From IMG/VR virus record IMGVR_UViG_3300034073_005389, positions 248,001 through 312,000 of that record: DNA of 64,000 nucleotides; one strand, written 5' to 3'. The position numbers and the translations under genes are program-made. Positions within the stretch are counted from its first letter, which is position 1; every line of letters starts with the position of its first letter. This document shows, piece after piece, positions 2,410 to 60,305 of the stretch. The notes beneath the pieces are model-generated. The model had not been told where the DNA came from, ran no database searches, and was given only the letters and a program-made list of their open reading frames with translations.

Positions 2410-2910
2410 TCACTTTAAACTTTTTTGCAAAGCTTTTTCTGCTTGAGCCAAACGCTTTTCTAAATTTTCTTTATGAATCTTTAATTGCTCTAAATCATAA
2501 ACTTGTTTTTGCGCAGCATAAACTTTCATCTTTTCTTTATATTCCGACATATCTTTCAAATATTGCGCATAGTTTTTCTCATAAGTCTCCATCTTAGACT
2601 TATATTGCTTCATCTGCTTATCATAATTTTCATTCTCTACATCCTCATACCAAGACAAATACATTTCCTTAATCTCTGCATCATCATCATATGCTGATGC
2701 CCTAACAGATAAACTAATTTCATTTTCTGGAACATTAATTTGGTTAGCGGCAGCAATAATGTCAGATAAAGAAAAAGACATTGTAGAGGCATAAGAACCG
2801 CCAAAAGAATATGTCCTCTCCACCCCTTTTAATGTTTTAGAAGGTGGATGTGGTTTATATGGAGAAGAAGGTAATCTAGGCTCTTTAGGTGCTTTCATTT
2901 TGTTAGCCAT
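2410..2910 (-). CDS. Hypothetical protein, Pro-rich N-terminus plus coiled coil; paralog of 10674..11153
   Basis: Shared KxPxxP start, YxDDD motif and ENxNYxKQxKxY coiled-coil segment. Confidence 0.65.
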   Translation of the reverse strand: MANKMKAPKEPRLPSSPYKPHPPSKTLKGVERTYSFGGSYASTMSFSLSDIIAAANQINVPENEISLSVRASAYDDDAEIKEMYLSWYEDVENENYDKQMKQYKSKMETYEKNYAQYLKDMSEYKEKMKVYAAQKQVYDLEQLKIHKENLEKRLAQAEKALQKSLK

Positions 2911-3345
2911 AACTTTCTATTTCTCTAATCCAGTTAATTGGATAAGTGTTTTGCTCAAAAATACAGTTAACGCAGTTTTATTTAATAAAGACATTTTCGT
3001 ATCTTTATTAACTTCATCCATAGAAGCTATAATAATCTCTTTAGCCTTTTGTATTCCCGTAGAATAACCATCTTTAACTCCTTGAGCATAATTAAGTAAT
3101 TCAGTTTTCTGAACTTTTTTCTTAACTTGTTTGGTAGTCATAGATTTATCTTGCGGAATAGGTCCTTGGCTGTTTAAGCGAGAACTATCTCCTGATACAA
3201 AAGAAGGTTGATTATCACAACGATTACAACCAAAAACATCGAAGGTTTTACCTTCAAGAAGAAAAGAAGTATGCTGGATTTGACCAACAAGGCATTTATT
3301 GCAATTCATATAATATAATAATGATTATGTAATAACTAACTGATT

Positions 3346-3621
3346 TGGCTCCGACTCCAGGATTCGGACCTGGGACCCGAGAGTTACAATCCTACTTCGG
3401 CTTTCGCCGCCCTCTAAATTGAGGTTCGTAGTCTGGACTATCCCATCACCCGTTCTGGGTGGATCCATTATAGTCTCTGCACCTTCCCTTATCGGGCTTG
3501 GCTCAGGATTGCCATATCTTGCGATGAAGGGTTCCCTGAATTTCGGATCTTTTACACCAATTATCCCTAACTGGCGCTGCCACTAACAGCTCTCTGCTAC
3601 TACCAACTGAGCTAAGTCGGA
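3346..3621 (-). tRNA. trnN: tRNA-Asn(GUU), intron-containing (exons 3586-3621 and 3346-3386), CCA encoded
   Basis: Joined exons give TCCGACT/AGTCGGA acceptor stem, G73-CCA, GAGAG/CTCTC anticodon stem and loop CTGT|TAA. Confidence 0.95.
3387..3585 (-). mobile_element. Group I intron (IC3-like, 199 nt) between tRNA positions 35 and 36
   Basis: Core elements AAUUCAGGGAAC, AAUCCUGAGC, GUGCAGAGACUA and GAUAGUCC; P1 GCUGU/GCAGC with U.G at the splice site; P3 GAUCC/GGAUC; P8 CACCC/GGGUG; GAAA-capped P9; terminal G. Confidence 0.93.
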
Positions 3622-3635
3622 AAAACTTACAACTA

Positions 3636-4298
3636 CTATATATTGTATTTCTCTTTTATTTTTTTAATAAAAGCATAGGTAGTGGATTTTGATCTATTAT
3701 ATCTTAATGCTATTTCTTTTACAGACATAGACTTTATTATGTCTATCATGATCTCATCACTATCCCACACAGATTTATATATCACCTCATCGCTACATTT
3801 TCTTGAACAAAAATTTCTTTTATTTTCAGCAGACTTATATACTTTAATTTCTTTTTCGCAATTAGAACATTTCTTGAAAACTGATCCTATATCAATCTTT
3901 TTTTCTGGAACAATTTTTCTTAAATTTTCATAAGTCTTTTCATTATTAATTTTATCTAAAATGTCATGAACTTCTCCATGACAATTTGAACATAATAATT
4001 CACACTTATCTAATTCTAATTTAATTTTTTCCCAAGATCTAATATTTGGATTAGAGATAGTAAAATCTTTTTGCTGCGGATCAATATGATGAAAAACTAA
4101 AGATCGTATTGATTTAGAATATCCGCATTTACTACATGCGCCGCCTTTATACTCTATAGCTTTTAATTTTAAAGCTCTACGACTTTCACTTATTCTCCAA
4201 CGTAAATAAATCTTTCTCTCTGAAGTTAATTTCCTTTTTGTCATAATAGTATGACAATTTATGTATACAGCTAAGCTATATCGTAAAATTTTTATCAC
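3636..4298 (-). CDS. Free-standing HNH endonuclease with zinc fingers (start may be 4244)
   Basis: CSKCGY...LVFHHIDP...CELLCSNCHGEVH HNH motif, a second CxxC...FCSRKC finger and a C-terminal HTH-like segment. Confidence 0.85.
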   Translation of the reverse strand: MIKILRYSLAVYINCHTIMTKRKLTSERKIYLRWRISESRRALKLKAIEYKGGACSKCGYSKSIRSLVFHHIDPQQKDFTISNPNIRSWEKIKLELDKCELLCSNCHGEVHDILDKINNEKTYENLRKIVPEKKIDIGSVFKKCSNCEKEIKVYKSAENKRNFCSRKCSDEVIYKSVWDSDEIMIDIIKSMSVKEIALRYNRSKSTTYAFIKKIKEKYNI

Positions 4299-49216: not shown

Positions 49217-50080
49217 ATGCACATATATCTGCATATATGTATGTCTGAAATTAAATGTAAATTTTGCGAAAAAATATTATTATCTAATATGTCTAGATCA
49301 ATACATCAATTAAGATGTAATCTTAATCCAGAATTTGACCCAAACAGATTTACAACACCATCTAGAAGAGGAAAGTATAAGTCAAACTCTCCATCTAAAA
49401 GCACATTAAAAAAACAAGAAAGTAAAACCCGACTAAAAAAACAATTAGATACAAAAAAATTTGTATGCCAATATTGTTGGCATGACATTACGACTTCAAC
49501 AAAACTGCCGCCTAAATTTTATTTTAAAGGCTTAAGGCTACATGAATCTATGTGCGGTAAAAATCCGCATGGGAAATCAGTAATGTATCCAACTAAACAT
49601 TCAGATAAAACTATCGAAAAATTAAAAGAGTCAGGTAAAAAAAGAGTTTGGACTCAGGAACAAAAAATAAAACTTAGTGAAAGTATGAAAAATGCTGTTA
49701 AAAAGCATCCGGAATCATACACAAATTCTAATAGAGGAAGGGTTAAACAAATAATATTTGATAATATCAAATTTCATGGTAAATGGGAAGTTGCTTTCTA
49801 TAAATGGTCAAAAGAAAACAATATTGAGATAAAAAAAAATATTGAAGGATTTAACTATTATTGGAGAGGTAATAGAACATATTTTCCTGATTTTTATCTT
49901 CCAAAATTAGAATTATTTATTGAAATAAAAGGATATGAAACATATCGAGACCAAGCAAAATGGTCTGCATTTCCTAAGAAACTTATAGTAATTAGAAAAG
50001 AACAAATTTTACAAATTAATAAAGGAATATTTCCTGGAATAGAAAGCATTCCTTTAACTAGTCCGACAAACAGGACTTGA
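49217..50080 (+). CDS. Free-standing PD-(D/E)xK endonuclease with zinc fingers and NUMOD3-like segment (start may be 49241)
   Basis: KWEVAF...YFPDFYL...FIEIKG; CxxC...HxxxC fingers; KHSDKTIEKL. Confidence 0.8.
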   Translation: MHIYLHICMSEIKCKFCEKILLSNMSRSIHQLRCNLNPEFDPNRFTTPSRRGKYKSNSPSKSTLKKQESKTRLKKQLDTKKFVCQYCWHDITTSTKLPPKFYFKGLRLHESMCGKNPHGKSVMYPTKHSDKTIEKLKESGKKRVWTQEQKIKLSESMKNAVKKHPESYTNSNRGRVKQIIFDNIKFHGKWEVAFYKWSKENNIEIKKNIEGFNYYWRGNRTYFPDFYLPKLELFIEIKGYETYRDQAKWSAFPKKLIVIRKEQILQINKGIFPGIESIPLTSPTNRT

Positions 50081-50373
50081 ACCTGTAACCACGCGATTAT
50101 GCTTACCACTACGATTTTCATCGCCTTTTTAAAGTTTGTGGTCTGGACTATACCTTCCCTCTCGGGTCTAACGTCTAGTCTCTACACCTTCTCAAATTTA
50201 TTGAGCTTGGCTCGGGATTAGCATATAAATTTCTTTACTTAGCTTTCCCCGAATTTGTCAGATTCTACCAAGATGTTTCACTTGGCAACCCACGATAGTA
50301 TATCATGAACATATATTGTTTTTAGATATACAATCTTCGAGTCGCATGCTCTAACCAATTGAGCTATTGTCGG
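50062..50373 (-). tRNA. trnI: tRNA-Ile2(CAU), intron-containing (exons 50340-50373 and 50062-50101), CCA not encoded
   Basis: Joined exons give CCGACAA/TTGTCGG, A73 and GCGACT|CATAATCGC, the anticodon arm I recall from E. coli ileX; lacks the initiator features; adjacent to tilS. Confidence 0.88.
50102..50339 (-). mobile_element. Group I intron (IC3-like, 238 nt) between tRNA positions 33 and 34
   Basis: AAAUUCGGGGAA, AAUCCCGAGC, GUGUAGAGACUA and UAUAGUCC; P1 GCGACU/GGUUGC; P3 UCUGAC/GUUAGA; P8 CCC-GAGA-GGG; terminal G. Confidence 0.92.
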
Positions 50374-52755: not shown

Positions 52756-52817
52756 TATATTCTCCTTTTATGTTTGTTATGGTGGGAATATAATATATAA
52801 TTATGAATAGAAAATAG

Positions 52818-52890
52818 CTGAGGAAGAAGGATTCGAACCTTCAACTTACGGATTCAAAGTCCGTCATTCTGCCAATTGAATTATTCCTCA
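52818..52890 (-). tRNA. trnQ: tRNA-Gln(UUG)
   Basis: TGAGGAA/TTCCTCA stem, G73, ACGGA-CTTTGAA-TCCGT arm and GGTTCGAATCC. Confidence 0.93.
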
Positions 52891-53030
52891 ATGCACTAAT
52901 TAAATTATTAGTGCAAAAATTTTAGTGCAAAACAATCTCTTCATCTGAACTATCAGCTGAATCTTCTAAGGAGATAAGAACTTCTCCATCTGGATAAATA
53001 TATGTATACCATCCACGAGGAAATTTATCT

Positions 53031-53267
53031 TCACTCATCATCTTCTTCGTCCTCATCGCTATCAAAATCTTCTTCCTCTTCCTCTTCTTCATCATCATCT
53101 GATTCAAATTCTACTAACTCACCATCTTCATCTTGCATAAGACCAGTAAGAATAACTATTTGACCATCGTCGTCAGTTGTAAGTTCAAAACCATTTGGAA
53201 ATAGTTCTTCCAATGCTTCTTCTAAATCTTCAAGAGTCATCATATGTATCTCCTTATTATTAAGCAC
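53031..53267 (-). CDS. Highly acidic small protein
   Basis: Roughly half Asp/Glu. Confidence 0.65.
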   Translation of the reverse strand: MLNNKEIHMMTLEDLEEALEELFPNGFELTTDDDGQIVILTGLMQDEDGELVEFESDDDEEEEEEEDFDSDEDEEDDE

Positions 53268-53350
53268 TATTATAACAGTAGTTGTAAGATTTTTACTTTT
53301 TAAGTAAAAATTTTGGCGCTATGTGATTGAACGTGATCTCACACACAGCA

Positions 53351-53381
53351 ACCTGCTAACTATGGCAAATAGTTAGCAGGT
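53351..53381. repeat. 13-bp perfect inverted repeat (terminator or operator)
   Basis: ACCTGCTAACTAT-GGCAA-ATAGTTAGCAGGT; no U-tract. Confidence 0.7.
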
Positions 53382-53390
53382 GATTATCAT

Positions 53391-53729
53391 TCACTTCATA
53401 TGAACGCGAACTACTCCGCCACCGTGACCACGAACCACAGTAAACTGAGTTCCAAGAGAAGTTTGAGCCTTAATATAGCTATGAACCTGCTTGCTAATTG
53501 CTGGGAACAAAGCTGGATCTTTAGAGATTGCAGTAGATACAGTGTAAACCAGCATAGTAGTTGGGATAGCAGAAGCACTATTATCAAATACTGCGTGCAT
53601 AGCGCGCTCAATATCTGTAGCTGGAACCTCATTTCGTGAAACCCAATCAGTTAGTGCCTTAGTATAAGCGGCAACTGAAGCGTTTACGTCAACTGAACCA
53701 TCAACACCATGAACTGTGAACTTATCCAT
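53391..53729 (-). CDS. Winged-helix-like protein with RGxxGG wing (paralog 2)
   Basis: FTVVRGHGGGVV. Confidence 0.5.
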   Translation of the reverse strand: MDKFTVHGVDGSVDVNASVAAYTKALTDWVSRNEVPATDIERAMHAVFDNSASAIPTTMLVYTVSTAISKDPALFPAISKQVHSYIKAQTSLGTQFTVVRGHGGGVVRVHMK

Positions 53730-53805
53730 TTTTAATTATATCTCCAATTATTATAATACTACTCAAACAATCTAAAATAGAACTATTCTATTTTAGAAAA
53801 CTAAA

Positions 53806-54138
53806 TCAATCTTCTGATACTGATTCAGAATTTGGGGCTACTTGAACCTCTACCTTTTTAGTGGGCTTCTTACTAGCATTTGGATCAGGCTTAAGAATAC
53901 CACCATGAGCGCCACGCCTAACTAGTACACCAGGATATGACTCTAGCAAAAATCGAATTGTTGGATATAGTTGAGGACCAGTCATTCCGAATTCTGCACC
54001 TAACTCAGCGGCAAGGGCAGTTGCAGGGATTTTATCTCCTGGATTTAGAGCTTCAATTCTCTCAGATGCCTTAACAAAAATTTCACGAATCTTATTTAGA
54101 GAAGCCTCTACATGATCTACATTATGCATTTTATTCAC
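53806..54138 (-). CDS. Winged-helix-like protein with RGxxGG wing (paralog 3)
   Basis: IPATALAAELG...QLYPTIRFL...VRRGAHGGIL. Confidence 0.55.
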   Translation of the reverse strand: MNKMHNVDHVEASLNKIREIFVKASERIEALNPGDKIPATALAAELGAEFGMTGPQLYPTIRFLLESYPGVLVRRGAHGGILKPDPNASKKPTKKVEVQVAPNSESVSED

Positions 54139-54182
54139 TCCAATTTACTTTGTTACTAACTTGGTACAGGGTACCGCCTCTA

Positions 54183-54215
54183 CTTATAAAAACCTAGGTT
54201 GCCCGATGGGCAACC
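54183..54215 (-). promoter_or_regulatory. Palindromic box-N8-TATAAG, copy 2
   Basis: Identical 19-bp palindrome at 54197-54215; TATAAG at 54183-54188. Confidence 0.6.
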
Positions 54216-54241
54216 CATATAATTACTTTATCTACAATAAC

Positions 54242-54568
54242 TCAATTTCGAGTTAAACCATTTTGGCGAATCCAAAGTCGAGCAGCCTTAATTGCTCTAG
54301 TTGGTGCGTCTTTATAAGATACAATATCTTTCATTACCGCTTCTGAAATATCGTGCATAGTAGCTTCTCTATGCATGGAGATCTTTAGCGGTTCCTCCAA
54401 AAGACGACCAAGAGCAAGTTGTCGTGCTACTGCACGATTAAAACGATCTCTTGGATTTAAGACTGAAAGCTGATAAGTAGCTGTCCCACTACTACGGTTC
54501 ACTTGAATTGCAAGACAACCAACGGGATGACCATTTTCTGAACGAAGATACATAATACGACGTGACAT
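54242..54568 (-). CDS. Hypothetical protein
   Basis: 108 aa; NPRDRFNRAVARQLALGRL is a common phage motif. Confidence 0.65.
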   Translation of the reverse strand: MSRRIMYLRSENGHPVGCLAIQVNRSSGTATYQLSVLNPRDRFNRAVARQLALGRLLEEPLKISMHREATMHDISEAVMKDIVSYKDAPTRAIKAARLWIRQNGLTRN

Positions 54569-54642
54569 ATTTATTACTCCTTGTTAACTAAACTTGGTTT
54601 AATTAGGTATTGATATTAGACGATTAAGATAAGGATTAAGTT

Positions 54643-55344
54643 ATGAATAGAATAATTATTTGTGGAAAAGATTATAGCCTTGATTGCCCCACTTTAACTT
54701 GGAAAGATAAAGGCGGATTTAATGCTTATCCTTACAAAAAGTTTAATTTAAGAAACTTAAAATTAGAAGATTTAAAGAAACAATCTTCTTGTTTTGTATT
54801 GCACCATTCAGTTACTTATACTGCGGCTACTTGCCAAGCCGTTTTAGTAAGCAGGGGTTTATCCTGTACTTTTCTAATTGATGATAATGACGTAGATGGA
54901 TATGCTACATTATATCAAACTTTAGATGTAAAAGAAGGTGCTTGGTCACATGGCGAAATGAATAATTTTGGTGCCGGAGTAGAAATTTGTTATATGCCCC
55001 AAGCATGGGAAAATAAAAATTTGTACTCCGAAAGTAATAGAAAAAAATTTAATGTTCCAGAACACTTTGTAGTGGATGATACAGTTCAAGGAAGAACATT
55101 AAAAGTCTTTGCGCCTACTGAAGCTCAAATAAAAACTTTAAAATGTTTAATTAAAACAGTATGTTCTGCTCTTGATATTCCTATGATTTTTCCTAAAAAT
55201 CAGGAAGGAAATATTATTAAAAGTATTTTATCAGATCCTAAACAACATAAAGGATTACTGGGTCATTTTAATATTAGTAAACAAAAAAACGACCCAGCAG
55301 GTTTAGATTTAGATTATCTTGAAAAATTTTTAAATGAAGAATAG
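54643..55344 (+). CDS. N-acetylmuramoyl-L-alanine amidase (Amidase_2)
   Basis: FVLHHS, AWSHG, GVEIC and LLGHFNISKQKNDP. Confidence 0.85.
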   Translation: MNRIIICGKDYSLDCPTLTWKDKGGFNAYPYKKFNLRNLKLEDLKKQSSCFVLHHSVTYTAATCQAVLVSRGLSCTFLIDDNDVDGYATLYQTLDVKEGAWSHGEMNNFGAGVEICYMPQAWENKNLYSESNRKKFNVPEHFVVDDTVQGRTLKVFAPTEAQIKTLKCLIKTVCSALDIPMIFPKNQEGNIIKSILSDPKQHKGLLGHFNISKQKNDPAGLDLDYLEKFLNEE

Positions 55345-55377
55345 TTTTTTTATTTGGGGTTCGTTGCCTTACCCTCA

Positions 55378-55405
55378 CTTCTAGTGAGGCGAGATGACCG
55401 ATGGG
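55378..55405 (-). promoter_or_regulatory. Degenerate copy 3: CCCATCGG-N14-TAGAAG
   Basis: Same core and the same core-to-hexamer spacing as copies 1 and 2. Confidence 0.45.
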
Positions 55406-55424
55406 AACCCCTCCTTGAATCACG

Positions 55425-56504
55425 CTATTTATTTAAATTATAGCCTTCTCCAACTAATTTTAGTTGCATTCTAGAATTTAATTTTGGTTCAAATCTTTCT
55501 TTTGTAGTTTTAACTACAAAACCTTCTCTAATATGCTTGCCGCCTAAGGTAGTCAATCCTTCAGCATAAGGATACATCTGATCTTTGCCAAGCCATTTCC
55601 CACGATACAACTCAGGGACCATATCTAATTGTAGATCGTTAATAATCTCAACAAATTTATCATAATCTAAATATCTTCCTGTTTTACGATCCCAGATATC
55701 AAAAAATCTAATTCTTGACTGATACTTACCATTTACTGGTGTTGTATCGTACTTAAATCCTTTAACTAGTCCATATAGCTCTCCAAAGAAAACTAAATTA
55801 GGATATCTAGTTAATTTTTCTTCTAGATTATAACGGATAGCAATATCCCACCAAGAATCTCCACCATCTCTTCTTTTATAGAGATTTCTAGATTTTACCC
55901 AGAATTTTTCTCCATCAAAACAATAGGAAGAATTCGCCCCATGTATTTTTTCGTTAATTACTATTTCTTCGTCAGGAAGTAAGCAATTTGCATACTGTCT
56001 CAATCCAGATACATCATAAAATGGAATACTCCATCCTACAGGAGATTTTTCCGTTTTTCCTGGATTAAGTTTTGCTTGCTCAGTATGTTCTTCTTCATCT
56101 TCTTCCATCTTTTTAAGATTAAAGAATTCAACTACTGAATCCCCAACAGAAAAATTATATGGGGCAGGAACCAGCATTCCCTGACTATAAATATTTCTAA
56201 TTTTCTTTGCCTTGATAACTCTGTATTTATCGGGAACAGAACCTAAAGTATATTTAGTGCCAATTACTTTTACTTCTCCTGATTCTGTTTTTTGAGTAAG
56301 TTTTGGGCAAAGAAAATAAAATTGTTGAGTGTCAGGAACGATAGTATCAGTTGGAAAATAAGCCGCTACACTATTTACTTTAAATTCCCCAGTCTTAATT
56401 ATTACTGGATAATCTCCAAGTACAGTTGCTATTTCTAAATTATCAGCATTAGGATGCTTTTCTATTTTTTCAATAATTACTACCTGTGGATTCCATTCTG
56501 ACAT
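55425..56504 (-). CDS. RNA ligase (Rnl2-like, DRB0094/Rnl5 type)
   Basis: N-terminal IEKHPNADNLE OB-like domain; EKIHG, FGELYG, REGFVVK and LKLV. Confidence 0.9.
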   Translation of the reverse strand: MSEWNPQVVIIEKIEKHPNADNLEIATVLGDYPVIIKTGEFKVNSVAAYFPTDTIVPDTQQFYFLCPKLTQKTESGEVKVIGTKYTLGSVPDKYRVIKAKKIRNIYSQGMLVPAPYNFSVGDSVVEFFNLKKMEEDEEEHTEQAKLNPGKTEKSPVGWSIPFYDVSGLRQYANCLLPDEEIVINEKIHGANSSYCFDGEKFWVKSRNLYKRRDGGDSWWDIAIRYNLEEKLTRYPNLVFFGELYGLVKGFKYDTTPVNGKYQSRIRFFDIWDRKTGRYLDYDKFVEIINDLQLDMVPELYRGKWLGKDQMYPYAEGLTTLGGKHIREGFVVKTTKERFEPKLNSRMQLKLVGEGYNLNK

Positions 56505-56598
56505 AATAATCTCCTTTAAGACTTAAAACTAAATATGGTCAGAAGAATACTAATACCTAGTATTATTTGTAATTTAAAAAATATTATATCCATAATTT

Positions 56599-56859
56599 TT
56601 ACACAAACAAATCTAAACCATATTCAGTCAAGGTAATATACTCATCATATTTAGCTGTGCCACTTTTTAATTTATCTTTAAGATAAATTAAATGCTTACA
56701 AGTCTTGCTACCACGATGAATAAAAGAAGGACAATTACAAGACCACTTTACTCCCCTACCTCCTTCTTTTTTAGATTTGCCTGTCCTGCTAATTCTATAA
56801 GGAATATCTTTATTTTTATTACTAAAACTCCAAACTAAAGCTACAGTTTCTTGATCCAT
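56599..56859 (-). CDS. SWIM zinc-finger protein
   Basis: WSCNCPSF...CKH. Confidence 0.8.
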   Translation of the reverse strand: MDQETVALVWSFSNKNKDIPYRISRTGKSKKEGGRGVKWSCNCPSFIHRGSKTCKHLIYLKDKLKSGTAKYDEYITLTEYGLDLFV

Positions 56860-57806
56860 TAATTTTTAATATCCTTAAAAAATTGTAACAAATTTGTTTC
56901 GGAAAAGTTTTTACGCTCTGATGAAGTACTAGATACTGCAAAATTTTGCTCTACTGCATCCAAATACATAGTAAATGTTCCATCAGAACCCATATAAAAA
57001 GTATTCCATGCTTCAGATGTAAAATACCTTTTGGCATTTAATTGTTGCAAAGCAAGGTTATCAAAAGATAAAATAATGTTATTATATTTGAAATATTTAA
57101 CTAATTGAGTATACCACTCATATTTATTAGCTTCTACTTCTTTATTTTTTAAATAGTAATTTAAACCATTACCATATTTCTTATAGCCAAGAATTAATAC
57201 CTTGCACTCTTTATTATTTTGTTGACAAAGTTGATATAATTGATCAATGTCGTCAACATGATTAATTCCCATTATTACATGAAATACTAGATGATCAGTT
57301 AATGAAATAATAGGTTGAATATCGTTCAGATACTTCGAATCAGAATAAGAAATACCAATACCAAAAACTAAATTATCAGTAATTAATTTTTCAATTAAAG
57401 ACTGATAATTTTTAACATGTTTTTGATTAATAGTAATATTAGGAATTAATCCTTGTTTTCTAACATTTTGTAGGAAGCTAATTAGCTTAGGATGAGCTAA
57501 TGGATTACCTCCTCCAATTGCTATCTCTACACCAGCCGGTAGAACCGAAAGCTCTAATTCTAACCTCTCTAGGTCAGCATGTTTGCCTTTTAAATTAGAC
57601 TTTTCATGGCAAAATGCGCATATAGGATTATCTGATGTTGGTTCGCAATAATTAGTGATCTTTACATCTAAAGATGATGGAAAGTCTACTGTTAATAGTT
57701 CTTGAGAACTATATTCTCTTTCAAGAGAGCCATCTTCAAATAATGTAACAGTAGTATTTCCATTTTGATACTTATGAAGAATTTGGCTCATCTTTGATTT
57801 TATCAA
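56859..57806 (-). CDS. Radical SAM protein with CX8CX2C cluster motif
   Basis: ITNYCEPTSDNPICAFCHE; EIAIGGGNPLAHP; NITIN. Confidence 0.85.
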   Translation of the reverse strand: MIKSKMSQILHKYQNGNTTVTLFEDGSLEREYSSQELLTVDFPSSLDVKITNYCEPTSDNPICAFCHEKSNLKGKHADLERLELELSVLPAGVEIAIGGGNPLAHPKLISFLQNVRKQGLIPNITINQKHVKNYQSLIEKLITDNLVFGIGISYSDSKYLNDIQPIISLTDHLVFHVIMGINHVDDIDQLYQLCQQNNKECKVLILGYKKYGNGLNYYLKNKEVEANKYEWYTQLVKYFKYNNIILSFDNLALQQLNAKRYFTSEAWNTFYMGSDGTFTMYLDAVEQNFAVSSTSSERKNFSETNLLQFFKDIKN

Positions 57807-58569
57807 TAGTAAATTTAATATTTTCTATAGAATTTACTTTATAAGTGGGGATTTTATATCCAATAACAAAATCAGCATCATATAAAATACAAATGCCATG
57901 CTCTATTAAAGAGAAACTATTTAGCTCTTTGCCATCTAAATCTTTAGACTTATTAAAGTTTGGATCAAATATTCTATAGTTAGAATAACTAATATTTTGA
58001 TCAGATAACTTATAAGTCATAAGTTTAAGTGATTTTTTAATCTCTGATGTTTCAGGGTATCCTAAAAACTTTGTGACGAGATTTGTATTTTCTACTTTTA
58101 AGAAATGAGTATATTTACTTTCTGGATGATTATAAAATTCACAATCAGCATCTGAATTATCATTTCCAGTATACAGCCAGCAGCTTGGATTAAAAATCCA
58201 ATTTTTAAGAATTTCTTTAGATTGAAAGATTGTTTTTGCCTCACCATCTTCTGACCAAGAAGATTGGTGATCAATATTAGAATCTCTAAGATCCCAATAA
58301 ATATCTTTGGCTCCAGTTTGCTCTTTTAGCACTTCATTTAACATTTCCACTTCTTGTGGATGGTCTTGACAAAAGACGGCTGCATAATTTGCTTTTGTGG
58401 TAGCATCGTTATATTTTTCCCATTCCCAACCAAATAAGCCGCCAGTCAAAGTAATAATACCATTATCTGGTATAATAGAATCGTAAATGCCGCTAACATT
58501 GGACACAATGGAAACAGAATGAGTGCTAGATGAATTAGTTTCAAAAACTTTATTCCTAATATTTTTCAT
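57772..58569 (-). CDS. Uncharacterised FETNSSSTHS-family protein, radical SAM partner
   Basis: RNKVFETNSSSTHS, FGWEWE, IDHQS and LYTGNDN; overlaps the rSAM start. Confidence 0.75.
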   Translation of the reverse strand: MKNIRNKVFETNSSSTHSVSIVSNVSGIYDSIIPDNGIITLTGGLFGWEWEKYNDATTKANYAAVFCQDHPQEVEMLNEVLKEQTGAKDIYWDLRDSNIDHQSSWSEDGEAKTIFQSKEILKNWIFNPSCWLYTGNDNSDADCEFYNHPESKYTHFLKVENTNLVTKFLGYPETSEIKKSLKLMTYKLSDQNISYSNYRIFDPNFNKSKDLDGKELNSFSLIEHGICILYDADFVIGYKIPTYKVNSIENIKFTIDKIKDEPNSS

Positions 58570-58591
58570 ATGTTACCTAATAACAATTTAG

Positions 58592-58672
58592 TGGGAAGTG
58601 ATGAATTTGAACCACCGTAGTCTATGACAAAGCGTTTACAGCGCTCCCCCGTTAGCCACTTGGGTAACTTCC
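58592..58672 (-). tRNA. trnY: tRNA-Tyr(GUA)
   Basis: GGGAAGT/ACTTCCC stem, A73, AGCG-CTGTAAA-CGCT arm and long variable arm. Confidence 0.9.
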
Positions 58673-58869
58673 CGAATACAGCATATGCAAGCTGACATAT
58701 GCACTATATCTTTAAGGCATATATAGTTTGCCATTAAATCAATAATAATTCTGAGACCTAAAATTCATATACCGCTCTTGCTTTAAGAATTTAATCTCAT
58801 CTTCTAAAATTTTAATTTTTTTCTCTAGCTCTTCTATTTTAGCTAGTAAAATTTTTACATCTTCCAAAA

Positions 58870-59692
58870 CTAATTTACCATTTTTTTATCAGATACCAAA
58901 TGTTCTCCTATAGCATACCCAATATCTGTAAGTTGGTAATATACTGTACCATCTTTAATAAAAGAGCTAACCAAACCATTAGCTAGCATTTGCTCCATAG
59001 CAAGATGAAATTCAGTTAATGATAAATTTAAATCTTCAAAACAAAATGGAGATCGAGGACTCATTATATTCTCTTTCTATAATTTATTAAAAATTGTTTG
59101 TGATCGTTGCACAAAATTTGACCTGCTTTAATAAATAAAAAAGCATCTGCTTCAGACCAGCCTTTATAAATTAAAGCATCATGTATTGATTGTATTGATT
59201 CTCCAATCAATATAGCTTGAGACACTATTGATATGATCTCATCAGCACGATCAATGCTGCTCATGGTCTACAGGCGTAGCAAGTATGCTTTCCGTCATTT
59301 GCGTCAGCAACTGCAAATTGATTATAGTTATTACATTTACGGCAAATAGCTCCGCTTTTATTTAAATTAATTTTAATCTGAGAAGAATTAGAAATTGACA
59401 TTCCAATTGAATTAGGTTTACTAAGTTTTGTTGGGCAAATAATAAATCTCATTGTGTCTGAGAAATTCATCTCTAATACTGCTTGTTGATAATTTCCTGT
59501 AGAAATTAAATTTTGAATATTATTTGATACAATAGGATCTAATTTTAAAAAATCTACTTCATTACAGTAGATGGCACAAGCTTGCTGATATGCCTCTCTT
59601 TCAGAAGAATATATTGGGATAGGGGTAGATTCGTTTTTCCAAACAGAAAACCCCTCATCTTTATAACTGATCTTAATAAGATATTTATTCAT
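58870..59692 (-). other. Three small hypothetical ORFs
   Basis: Coupled ORFs; the last has a C-terminal CxxC...CxxC. Confidence 0.65.
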
Positions 59693-59848
59693 CTACTTTT
59701 CCTTTGGGGTAATACATATAACCTATGGCAGATAAATGTAAAATAATAAAAAAATAAAATAAATATTTTATATTATCATTGACAGTAAAAACTACCATGG
59801 CGCATGTAATCAAATTCATAATTAGCGCTGGTAACAAGTTTTCATATT

Positions 59849-60220
59849 TCACTTAAAAACTTCCCATGTTCCATTAGAAAATAAATAAAAATAATTCATA
59901 ACAGAATCAGGAATTTTTTGTTTCATTTCAGAAACTGAAGAATAATTTATAGTTTCATAGATATCGTCTCCTTCTCTTCTATCTCTAGGATAAGAGATTA
60001 CCCAATTAGGAGTAGGACTATGGAAAGAGTGCGGCTCACCAATTTCATGGTTAAGCTCAGAAATTGGTCCTATTTTTATTAAATCTAACACCTTATCTAA
60101 TTTTAGATAAGATTTTTCTAAAATTGATAAGTGGTGCTTAGGATATCCATCCCAATGACAATAAATGCCTTCAATAGAATTGTCTAATTTAATATAGCCA
60201 ATAAATGATCTGGTTGACAT
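59849..60220 (-). CDS. Conserved phage hypothetical protein
   Basis: MSTRSFIG...IYCHWDGYP family motif. Confidence 0.75.
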   Translation of the reverse strand: MSTRSFIGYIKLDNSIEGIYCHWDGYPKHHLSILEKSYLKLDKVLDLIKIGPISELNHEIGEPHSFHSPTPNWVISYPRDRREGDDIYETINYSSVSEMKQKIPDSVMNYFYLFSNGTWEVFK

Positions 60221-60233
60221 AACTTTCCTTTAG

Positions 60234-60305
60234 AGCAGGCGACAAGACTTGAACTTGCAACATTTCGGATGGAAACCGAAGGCTCTGCCATTGAGCTACG
60301 CCTGC
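60234..60305 (-). tRNA. trnG: tRNA-Gly(UCC)
   Basis: GCAGGCG/CGCCTGC stem, U73 and TTCGG-TTTCCAT-CCGAA arm. Confidence 0.92.

What the first reader, a model, noticed from the sequence alone, without database searches (positions are those of the whole stretch)
3346..3621. Phage tRNA-Asn split by a group I intron inside the anticodon (35/36)
Seen: a complete 199-nt intron with P1 U.G, P3, P7, P8, P9 and terminal G splits the GUU anticodon as GU|U. Known: classic bacterial tRNA group I introns sit at 33/34 (fMet), 34/35 (Leu-UAA) or 36/37 (Arg-CCU, Azoarcus Ile-CAU). I recall 35/36 Asn/Asp introns being reported recently in Patescibacteria, which needs checking. A phage example would be easily missed by standard tRNA callers, and phage could be the vector spreading such introns.
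Basis: partly seen in the sequence, partly recalled or inferred. Interest (0 to 1): 0.75.

Follow-up and report, generated by a model that had tools for sequence, protein, structure and literature searches.

The report
Self-splicing intron inside phage tRNA-Asn anticodon
A 361-kb freshwater jumbo phage carries its only asparagine tRNA gene split inside the anticodon by a 199-base self-splicing (group I) intron, one of the first such cases seen in a phage, and a near-identical phage strain lacks exactly those 199 bases.

Summary
On the minus strand, 3621-3346 is a tRNA gene. It has a 36-nt 5' exon ending CTGT, a 199-nt intron (3585-3387, ending in G), and a 41-nt 3' exon starting TAA and ending in an encoded CCA. 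Rfam Intron_gpI scores 52.7 bits (cut-off 50) in a local scan. Default ARAGORN, the Rfam tRNA model and the whole-window Rfam scan all miss the gene.

Joining the exons gives a normal tRNA-Asn(GUU) with discriminator G73. Only the 35/36 junction obeys the group I rules: the 5' exon ends in a U paired with G, and the intron ends in G.

A metagenome contig from the same phage species (flanks 97-100% identical) has the same tRNA without the 199 nt. This fixes the exon junction and shows that the intron is gained or lost.

The intron belongs to a family I found in 61 tRNA-Asn, 4 tRNA-Asp and 2 tRNA-Tyr genes, all at 35/36. They come from many bacterial phyla and 8 viral contigs, and the helices show abundant compensatory changes.

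Phage-type copies form their own clade. Endonuclease genes directly flank most of the phage split tRNA genes examined here.

Splicing itself was not observed. This is a new member of a known kind, in a barely documented setting (phage tRNA).

The parts
3346..3621 (-). Whole split tRNA-Asn(GUU) gene (276 nt including the encoded CCA)
   Evidence: Reading of the sequence. ARAGORN -i calls a split tRNA here with a 199-nt intron. My split-tRNA scanner finds it.
3586..3621 (-). 5' exon, tRNA positions 1-35: acceptor TCCGACT, D arm with one extra base, anticodon-stem strand GAGAG, then C32 U33 G34 U35
   Evidence: The best full-length blastn matches are annotated phage tRNA-Asn genes. It is identical in the intronless allele L264.
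3387..3585 (-). Group I intron, 199 nt, no ORF
   Evidence: Rfam Intron_gpI 52.7 bits, E 1.5e-12. Helix table. Precisely absent from L264.
3346..3386 (-). 3' exon: U36 A37 A38, anticodon-stem strand CTCTC, variable loop GGGTC, T arm with loop TCCGAAT (C55), acceptor AGTCGGA, G73, CCA
   Evidence: The spliced exons fold as tRNA-Asn(gtt) in ARAGORN.
3577..3589 (-). P1 hairpin: exon C32-U35 (3589-3586) paired with guide GCAG (3580-3577). U35.G (3586/3580) marks the 5' splice site. G at 3581 can pair with intron base +1, or with U36 of the 3' exon (P10).
   Evidence: RNAalifold predicts this helix in all 14 aligned sequences. The pattern used to collect the relatives fixed CTGT and GGCAGC, so P1 conservation is not independent evidence.
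3556..3575 (-). P2 hairpin (7 bp, 6-nt loop)
   Evidence: 7 of 7 pairs show compensatory changes across 14 sequences. A strain variant at 3571 turns a G.U pair into A-U.
3462..3549 (-). P3 (3549-3545 with 3466-3462), enclosing the P4-P6 domain
   Evidence: 5 of 5 pairs compensatory, 94% canonical against 39-51% when the partner is slid by one column.
3503..3539 (-). P4 (3539-3534 / 3508-3503) with P5/P5a (3530-3512). P5a is capped by a GCAA tetraloop. A CC...UAUGG variant of the tetraloop receptor is present.
   Evidence: The receptor reading rests on my knowledge of the 11-nt receptor in Azoarcus-type introns and is an inference.
3481..3502 (-). P6/P6a
3436..3475 (-). P7 (3475-3470 with 3441-3436), which forms the guanosine-binding core and is pseudoknotted with P3. 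It encloses the P3 3' strand and P8 (3461-3447).
   Evidence: The core is invariant in the alignment. It matches the Rfam consensus at high posterior probability. 4 of 5 P8 pairs are compensatory.
3392..3431 (-). P9 three-way domain: P9, P9a, and P9b with a GAAA tetraloop. This domain is specific to the phage clade and resembles tRNA-Leu(UAA)-type introns.
   Evidence: 100% canonical with compensatory changes among the four phage sequences. 77% identical to the L122 Leu(UAA) intron, against 43-49% to bacterial Asn introns.
3387..3387 (-). Terminal guanosine (omega G) at the 3' splice site
3636..4298 (-). Free-standing HNH endonuclease gene (220 aa), same strand, ending 15 nt upstream of the tRNA. 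The link to the intron is inferred.
   Evidence: PHROG HNH families, E 4.5e-27. A full-length homologue lies directly beside the Asn intron-tRNA of L124. Only two copies of this type exist in the 361-kb genome.

Best explanation
This is a phage-encoded tRNA-Asn(GUU) gene interrupted between anticodon positions 35 and 36 by a small (199 nt), ORF-less group I intron of the tRNA-intron type (IC3-like).

Inferred mechanism. The gene is transcribed with its neighbours on the minus strand. The first four bases of the anticodon loop (C32 U33 G34 U35) pair with the intron's internal guide GCAG to form P1, and the U35.G wobble marks the 5' splice site. The two anticodon-stem strands hold the exons together. 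An external guanosine bound in P7 attacks after U35. The terminal G (3387) then occupies the same site, and U35 attacks in front of U36. This ligates the exons to give the loop CUGUUAA and a normal 77-nt tRNA with an encoded CCA.

Shown here: the anatomy, family membership, covariation of the helices, the exact exon junction (from an intronless allele in the same phage species), and the presence/absence polymorphism of the intron.

Inferred, not shown: self-splicing activity, and any role for the adjacent endonuclease genes in moving the intron.
For: Rfam Intron_gpI scores 52.7 bits, E 1.5e-12. Relatives L124, L125 and L127 score 62, 55 and 50 bits.

Every helix from P1 to P9b is fully paired in this sequence.

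RNAalifold independently predicts the tRNA stems plus P1, P2, P3, P4, P5, P8 and P9. 38 of 58 predicted pairs are compensatory. My per-helix counts give 79-100% canonical pairs in all helices except P5a, P6a and P9 across the 14 sequences, against roughly 13-65% for most helices when the partner is slid by one column. Within the 4-phage clade, pairing is essentially 100% canonical, with compensatory changes in P2, P3, P5a, P6a, P8, P9, P9a and P9b.

In-silico splicing at 35/36 gives an ARAGORN tRNA-Asn(gtt). This is the only tRNA-Asn in the phage genome.

The intronless allele L264 has flanks 96.7-100% identical to this genome and carries exactly exon 1 joined to exon 2.

The same insertion site occurs in 61 Asn, 4 Asp and 2 Tyr genes. 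58 of the 61 Asn introns begin with C, so 35/36 is unambiguous there.

Three genomes with the split gene (G001-G003; L179 and L174 are complete chromosomes) have no uninterrupted tRNA-Asn(GUU), while control genomes do.

Strain variants keep the structure. 3571 turns a G.U pair into A-U in P2. A 2-nt deletion falls in the L9a loop. U55 replaces C55 in another strain.
Against: No RNA evidence of splicing was obtained. The metatranscriptome runs held only a related intron fragment, and no exon-exon joint was seen.

The Rfam score is only just above the cut-off. P1 and P2 are misaligned by the generic model.

P10 is at most 2 bp.

The T loop has C55 instead of the near-universal U55. However, the intronless allele and two bacterial family members share C55.

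The two T's at the junction leave a formal one-base ambiguity (35/36 or 36/37) in this sequence alone.
Confidence: 0.88

Rival explanations
1. The gene encodes tRNA-Thr(UGU), with the intron two bases further 5' (after U33), as ARAGORN -i labels it.
For: ARAGORN -i prints tRNA-Thr(tgt) i(35,199). A 7-nt loop CUUGUAA can also be assembled from the sequence.
Against: That junction would make the intron end in U rather than G. It would also place the splice site after a U-A pair rather than a U.G pair. The body carries the Asn features U1-A72 and G73; the identity rule is from my knowledge of E. coli tRNA-Asn. The intronless allele of the same phage reads CTGTTAA, which is Asn. In relatives the two bases before the 3' exon vary (TG, CG, AG), which would make the 'anticodon' drift.
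Confidence: 0.02
2. The intron is a decayed, non-splicing remnant and the gene is a tRNA pseudogene.
For: The Rfam score is marginal. The T loop has C55. P10 is weak. No spliced RNA was seen. An intronless allele exists, so the phage can do without the intron.
Against: All 16 helices (P1-P9b) are intact in the intron, and the tRNA stems are too. The conserved core matches the family at invariant positions. Variation between strains and between the four phage relatives is compensatory or falls in loops. It is the only Asn tRNA of the phage. C55 is also present in the intronless allele and in other family members.
Confidence: 0.08
3. The locus is bacterial, a host island inside a mis-delimited 'provirus', not a phage gene.
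For: IMG/VR classes the record's ends as 'provirus'. The exons are nearly identical in the D arm and anticodon arm to an abundant uninterrupted bacterial-looking tRNA-Asn (L263, GC 49%; X11 contig at 110x).
Against: The record is 361 kb and 97% complete by CheckV, with 33% GC throughout. It has phage-family genes around the locus: PHROG-only families, helicase, RNA ligase and HNH genes. It carries a tRNA array and a tmRNA. The four closest introns are all on IMG/VR contigs.
Confidence: 0.03

Closest known systems
[quoted passage not shown] 1990, Kuhsel et al. 1990, cited in PMC3984707)
   Same: It is a small ORF-less group I intron sitting inside the anticodon itself. P1 is built from the anticodon loop, and the exons are held by the anticodon stem. 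The window's P9 three-way domain is 77% identical to that of a viral-contig Leu(UAA) intron (L122). The phage Asn clade groups with L122 in the trees (99/98 and 98/94 support).
   Different: The site is 34/35 in tRNA-Leu, against 35/36 in tRNA-Asn here. The guide sequence differs. The host is cellular or organellar rather than a phage.
Azoarcus tRNA-Ile(CAU) and Agrobacterium tRNA-Arg(CCU) introns (Reinhold-Hurek and Shub 1992, cited in PMC4090602)
   Same: They are compact tRNA introns of about 200 nt with tetraloop-receptor contacts. The Klebsiella jumbo phage Muenster carries an unannotated tRNA(CAU) intron of this 36/37 type (104 bits).
   Different: Their site is 36/37, after the anticodon, rather than inside it. 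They have a single P9 hairpin rather than a three-way P9.
Group I introns at a 'novel insertion site' in tRNA genes of Patescibacteria (Nakagawa, Amikura, Omae, Suzuki, bioRxiv 2025.07.03.662931; seen only as reference B51 of PMC12641178)
   Same: Probably the same 35/36 class. My scan finds 35/36 Asn introns in Patescibacteria genomes L140, L155, L181, L191, L196 and L207.
   Different: The text could not be read, so the identity of the site is unverified. The window's intron is phage-borne and lies in a separate clade from the Patescibacteria copies.
Phage group I introns paired with free-standing homing endonucleases (collaborative homing: cyanophage psbA intron with F-CphI; T-even mobE; Bonocora and Shub 2009, Zeng et al. 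2009, from my knowledge)
   Same: It is an ORF-less intron with an endonuclease gene immediately beside the interrupted gene. The intron is present or absent among close strains.
   Different: The target here is a tRNA gene rather than a protein gene. No cleavage specificity is known. The intronless strain appears to keep at least the 3' end of the upstream HNH gene, which does not fit the simplest form of the model.

Membership tests
Group I intron (Rfam RF00028) | Covariance-model score at or above the curated cut-off | tested here: met
   52.7 bits against 50, E 1.5e-12, in the local scan. The whole-window gathering scan did not report it because of the speed filters.
Group I intron (Rfam RF00028) | P1 with a U.G wobble at the 5' splice site, and a terminal G before the 3' exon | tested here: met
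   U35 (3586) pairs with G (3580). The intron ends with G at 3387.
Group I intron (Rfam RF00028) | Conserved core P3-P4-P6-P7-P8 with the P3/P7 pseudoknot | tested here: met
   All pairs are canonical in the window. P3 and P8 covary. P4 and P7 are invariant.
Group I intron (Rfam RF00028) | Guanosine-dependent self-splicing | not testable with these tools
   No spliced RNA was seen in public runs. A bench assay is needed.
tRNA-Asn(GUU) | Cloverleaf with anticodon GUU after exon joining | tested here: met
   ARAGORN calls tRNA-Asn(gtt), 77 nt, on the joined exons. The intronless allele L264 is called tRNA-Asn(gtt).
tRNA-Asn(GUU) | Discriminator G73 (an Asn identity element in E. coli, from my knowledge) | tested here: met
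   G at 3349. All 61 family Asn genes have discriminator G.
tRNA-Asn(GUU) | Canonical T loop (T54 U55 C56) | tested here: not met
   The loop is TCCGAAT, with C55. Strain X4 has TTCGACT. L264, L237 and L239 also have C55. This is a deviation, but not a feature that defines Asn identity.
35/36 tRNA intron family (Asn/Asp/Tyr, guide GGCAG) | Insertion between anticodon positions 35 and 36, with a CUGU/GCAG P1 | tested here: met
   The collecting pattern fixed CTGT and GGCAGC, so P1 conservation is by construction.
35/36 tRNA intron family (Asn/Asp/Tyr, guide GGCAG) | Common descent with the bacterial Asn introns | tested here: inconclusive
   The window clade groups with Leu(UAA)- and CAU(33/34)-type introns (99/98; core only 98/94). 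The AU test of all-Asn monophyly gives p = 0.043, and the hypothesis was chosen after seeing the tree.
Intron plus free-standing homing endonuclease (collaborative homing) | An endonuclease gene adjacent to the intron-bearing gene | tested here: met
   HNH at 3636-4298. Homologues or other endonucleases lie beside L124, L125, L068 and the window's CAU intron-tRNA. None was detected beside L127.
Intron plus free-standing homing endonuclease (collaborative homing) | The endonuclease cleaves the intronless allele, and the intron disrupts its site | not testable with these tools
   The intronless strain L264 still shows the last 35 nt of the upstream HNH gene at 100% identity. This argues against the simplest version of the model.

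The most novel reading that the evidence does not exclude
The tRNA-Asn locus of this phage is a battleground of cooperating selfish elements. Under this reading, the free-standing endonucleases beside it cut intronless tRNA-Asn DNA. The candidates are the HNH upstream in the window, and a different HNH/EndoVII-like gene downstream in the intronless strain. The targets could include competing phage genomes, and perhaps the host's nearly identical tRNA-Asn genes. The intron would make the carrier's own copy immune. Because the guide GCAG reads the CUGU shared by all GUN-anticodon tRNAs (Asn, Asp, Tyr, His), one intron lineage could hop among these tRNAs, and between phages and bacteria.
Probability: 0.15. 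Interest if true: 0.8.

Novelty: new member of a known kind. Interest (0 to 1): 0.58.

Why it matters
The standard review of bacterial group I introns (Hausner, Hafez and Edgell 2014, PMC3984707) states that all phage introns seen so far lie in protein-coding genes, despite the many phage tRNA genes. This window shows two split tRNA genes in one jumbo phage. Related cases exist in other viral contigs, and in cultured Klebsiella and E. coli jumbo phages, where the gene is unannotated.

Three consequences follow.
- Phage tRNA repertoires are undercounted by standard callers.
- The 35/36 site is widespread in bacteria, beyond Patescibacteria.
- The natural intron-plus and intron-minus pair in one phage species, flanked by different free-standing endonucleases, is a ready-made system for studying how ORF-less introns move.

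Tried and rejected
- Default ARAGORN and the Rfam tRNA model see nothing at 3346-3621.
- The whole-window Rfam gathering scan misses the intron.
- ARAGORN -i finds the split gene but mislabels it Thr. It also mislabels the second one as Leu.
- Flanking proteins (2917-3309 and 1669-2331) have no relatives in IMG/VR, so synteny could not be used.
- megablast of 20 kb of the window against cultured phages found nothing.
- blastn of three 35/36 split Asn/Asp genes (the window's, L126 and L068) against 50,697 phage records matched only the generic core, in protein-gene introns or the Alcyoneusvirus CAU tRNA. No cultured phage with a 35/36 intron was found.
- RNA runs held only a 129-nt stretch of a related intron, and there was no exon-exon joint.
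- The Nakagawa 2025 preprint and Paquin 1997 are not held.
- Exact-protein look-ups gave no longer contig of the intronless strain.
- PDB sequence searches for both endonucleases gave nothing useful.
- I considered and rejected the Thr reading, a pseudogene and a bacterial island (see rival explanations).
- I did not build my own covariance model, because the alignment-based covariation already answered the question.

Full report
**What is there.** Read on the minus strand, 3621-3346 is a tRNA gene in two pieces.
- The 5' piece (3621-3586, 36 nt) holds acceptor strand TCCGACT, a D arm with one extra base, anticodon-stem strand GAGAG, and then CTGT.
- The 3' piece (3386-3346, 41 nt) starts TAA. 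It continues with CTCTC, a 5-nt variable loop, a T arm, acceptor strand AGTCGGA, discriminator G and an encoded CCA.
- Between them lie 199 nt (3585-3387) that begin TAGTGG and end in G.

Default ARAGORN, the Rfam tRNA model and the whole-window Rfam gathering scan all report nothing here. A local Rfam scan gives Intron_gpI at 52.7 bits, against a cut-off of 50, with E 1.5e-12. ARAGORN with introns allowed finds the split gene and the 199-nt intron, but labels it Thr.

**Anatomy.** I mapped every helix by hand and checked it by script.
- P1 is C32-U35 paired with GCAG, with U35.G at the splice site.
- P2 has 7 bp.
- P3 is pseudoknotted with P7.
- P4 is present.
- P5/P5a carries a GCAA tetraloop and a CC...UAUGG receptor-like motif.
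- P6/P6a and P8 are present.
- P9/P9a/P9b forms a three-way junction, with a GAAA tetraloop on P9b.
- The intron ends with the terminal G.

All pairs are Watson-Crick or G.U. The unconstrained MFE fold recovers P2, P4, P5, P6a, P7, P8, P9a and P9b, with z = -2.3.

**Which junction.** Four ways of joining the pieces give a 7-nt anticodon loop. They yield either UGU/GGU (Thr) or GUU (Asn). Only CTGT|...G|TAA has a 5' exon ending in a U that pairs with G in P1 and an intron ending in G. That is position 35/36, which splits GUU as GU|U.

Independent support comes from four sources.
- The body has U1-A72 and G73, like E. coli tRNA-Asn (my knowledge). The 5' half matches annotated phage tRNA-Asn genes.
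- 58 of 61 homologous introns begin with C rather than T, so the one-base ambiguity disappears there.
- Three genomes with the split gene, two of them complete chromosomes, have no uninterrupted tRNA-Asn(GUU). Control genomes show theirs with the same pattern.
- Most directly, an intronless allele exists in the same phage species (next section).

**The intronless allele.** A scan of metagenome contigs for the joined exons returned L264 (1,238 bp, 32% GC). Its flanks match this genome at 100% (window 3584-3670) and 96.7% (window 2855-3346). Its tRNA-Asn is uninterrupted and reads ...GAGAGCTGTTAACTCTC....

The 199 nt are therefore a discrete element that is present in one strain and precisely absent in another. 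Instead, L264 carries an extra 617 bp between the tRNA and the next gene. This segment encodes a 182-aa HNH/EndoVII-like endonuclease that this genome lacks.

Other strains in public DNA runs keep the intron with structure-neutral changes. 3571 turns a P2 G.U pair into A-U. A 2-nt deletion falls in the L9a loop. One strain has the canonical U55 where the window has C55.

**The family.** I searched for a pattern built from P1 plus the start of P4 (CTGT, 3-9 nt, GGCAGC, 20-45 nt, AATTCAGGGAA). I estimate about 50 of the genome hits are chance matches.

My split-tRNA scanner found a complete interrupted tRNA at 67 of these sites. These were 61 Asn(GUU), 4 Asp(GUC) and 2 Tyr(GUA). All are at 35/36, and all the Asn genes have discriminator G. 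Introns range from 189 to 319 nt.

Hosts include Methylomirabilota/Rokubacteria, Omnitrophota, Planctomycetota, Elusimicrobiota, Nitrospirota, Bacillota, Pseudomonadota and several Patescibacteria.

In a 14-sequence alignment, RNAalifold predicts the tRNA stems plus P1, P2, P3, P4, P5, P8 and P9 on its own. 38 of 58 predicted pairs are compensatory. My per-helix counts and slid-partner controls agree.

The guide GCAG reads CUGU. All GUN-anticodon tRNAs share that sequence, which explains why the same site is used in Asn, Asp and Tyr. This last point is an inference.

**Where the phage copy sits.** The genome is a 361,490-bp IMG/VR virus record. It is 97% complete and 33% GC, and it has a tmRNA and a tRNA array. 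It occurs in subsurface, freshwater and lake metagenomes from several studies.

The four closest introns (71-76% identity) are all on viral contigs (L124, L125, L127/L131). Together with the window they form a clade with 96/91 support, or 100/98 on the core alone. That clade groups with the window's own second intron and with a viral Leu(UAA) intron, not with the bulk of the bacterial Asn introns.

An AU test of all-Asn monophyly gives p = 0.043. It was chosen after seeing the tree, so I treat a separate origin or a mosaic as suggestive only. Other viral-contig copies (L126, L129, L068) nest among bacterial ones. Exchange between phages and bacteria is therefore plausible but not demonstrated.

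**Endonuclease neighbours.**
- An HNH gene (3636-4298) ends 15 nt upstream of the tRNA.
- Its full-length homologue (29% identity, E 8e-21) lies directly downstream of the Asn intron-tRNA of L124. This genome has only two genes of that type.
- L125 has a different endonuclease (phrog_15137) 5 nt upstream of its split gene. A homologue of that endonuclease (33% identity, E 3e-23) abuts the window's second split tRNA.
- L068 (Asp) has an HNH/NUMOD3 gene beside it.
- L127 has no detectable endonuclease.

This recurring adjacency, together with the intron-plus and intron-minus strains, resembles the partnership of an intron with a free-standing endonuclease known from phage protein genes. One fact argues against the simplest form of that model. 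The intronless strain still shows the end of the upstream HNH gene.

**Literature.** The 2014 review PMC3984707 says all phage introns known then were in protein genes. My searches found no later report of a phage tRNA group I intron.

[quoted passage not shown] It is not held, so whether its site is 35/36 is unverified.

**Verdict.** This is a real, intact-looking group I intron at 35/36 in the phage's only tRNA-Asn gene. The mechanism is the known one, so I rate it a new member of a known kind. Three things are new: the phage setting, the distinct phage clade, and the population-level presence/absence polymorphism with flanking endonucleases. Splicing has not been observed and needs a bench test.

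Noticed in passing
window 50062-50373 (-): A second split tRNA lies in the same window. Rfam Intron_gpI scores 52.1 bits. ARAGORN -i mislabels it Leu(caa).
   Followed up: partly
window 49217-50080 (+): A 287-aa endonuclease gene (phrog_15137, with NUMOD3-like repeats and a PD-(D/E)XK-like ...IEIKGY motif) converges on and overlaps the 3' end of the CAU split tRNA. It is a homologue (33% identity, E 3e-23) of the endonuclease that sits 5 nt upstream of the Asn split tRNA in L125.
   Followed up: partly
L003:1415-1735 (Klebsiella phage Muenster MT708547, about 302,830-303,150); the same in phiKp_21, KP13-7, RCIP0023, E. coli phages TH47 and Turkey5: Cultured jumbo phages (Alcyoneusvirus and relatives) carry an unannotated tRNA(CAU) split after U36 by a 231-nt group I intron (Rfam 104 bits). 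It lies inside an annotated tRNA array, with an HNH gene just downstream.
   Followed up: partly
L264:526-1074 (-): The intronless strain of this phage has an extra 617-bp segment downstream of tRNA-Asn. The segment holds a 182-aa HNH/EndoVII-like endonuclease that is absent from this genome. In that strain the tRNA has no encoded CCA.
   Followed up: yes
window 3362-3368 (-): The T loop reads TCCGAAT, with C55 instead of U55. A strain in run X4 has TTCGACT. The intronless allele and two bacterial family members (L237, L239) also have C55.
   Followed up: partly
L263:2371-2445; X11 contig of 21.5 kb at 110x: An abundant organism with 49% GC in the same lake metagenomes has an uninterrupted tRNA-Asn. 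Its D arm (including the odd extra base), anticodon arm and variable loop are identical to the phage exons. This may be a clue to the host, or to the origin of the phage tRNA.
   Followed up: no
G000:C1:103937-104910 (outside the window): A third group I intron lies in the genome (Rfam 25.6 bits for the 3' part). It carries a LAGLIDADG-like ORF and is inserted in a protein-coding gene.
   Followed up: no
window 55425-56504 (-) and 52817-60305: An RNA ligase gene (PHROG RNA ligase families) lies inside the tRNA array (Gln, Tyr, Gly). This is the usual signature of phage tRNA repair against anticodon nucleases.
   Followed up: no
run X24 (metatranscriptome), contig of 182 nt over window 3432-3560: An RNA-library contig holds a related intron (90-95% identical in the core) preceded by CTGTCAAAAGGCAGC. 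This is another CTGT| 5' exon with the same guide, and it appears unspliced.
   Followed up: no
L162, L168, L225, L128: Four loci have a tRNA-Asn-like or Asp-like 5' half and the same intron start, but my scanner found no 3' exon within 3 kb. They may be longer, ORF-containing introns or broken genes.
   Followed up: partly
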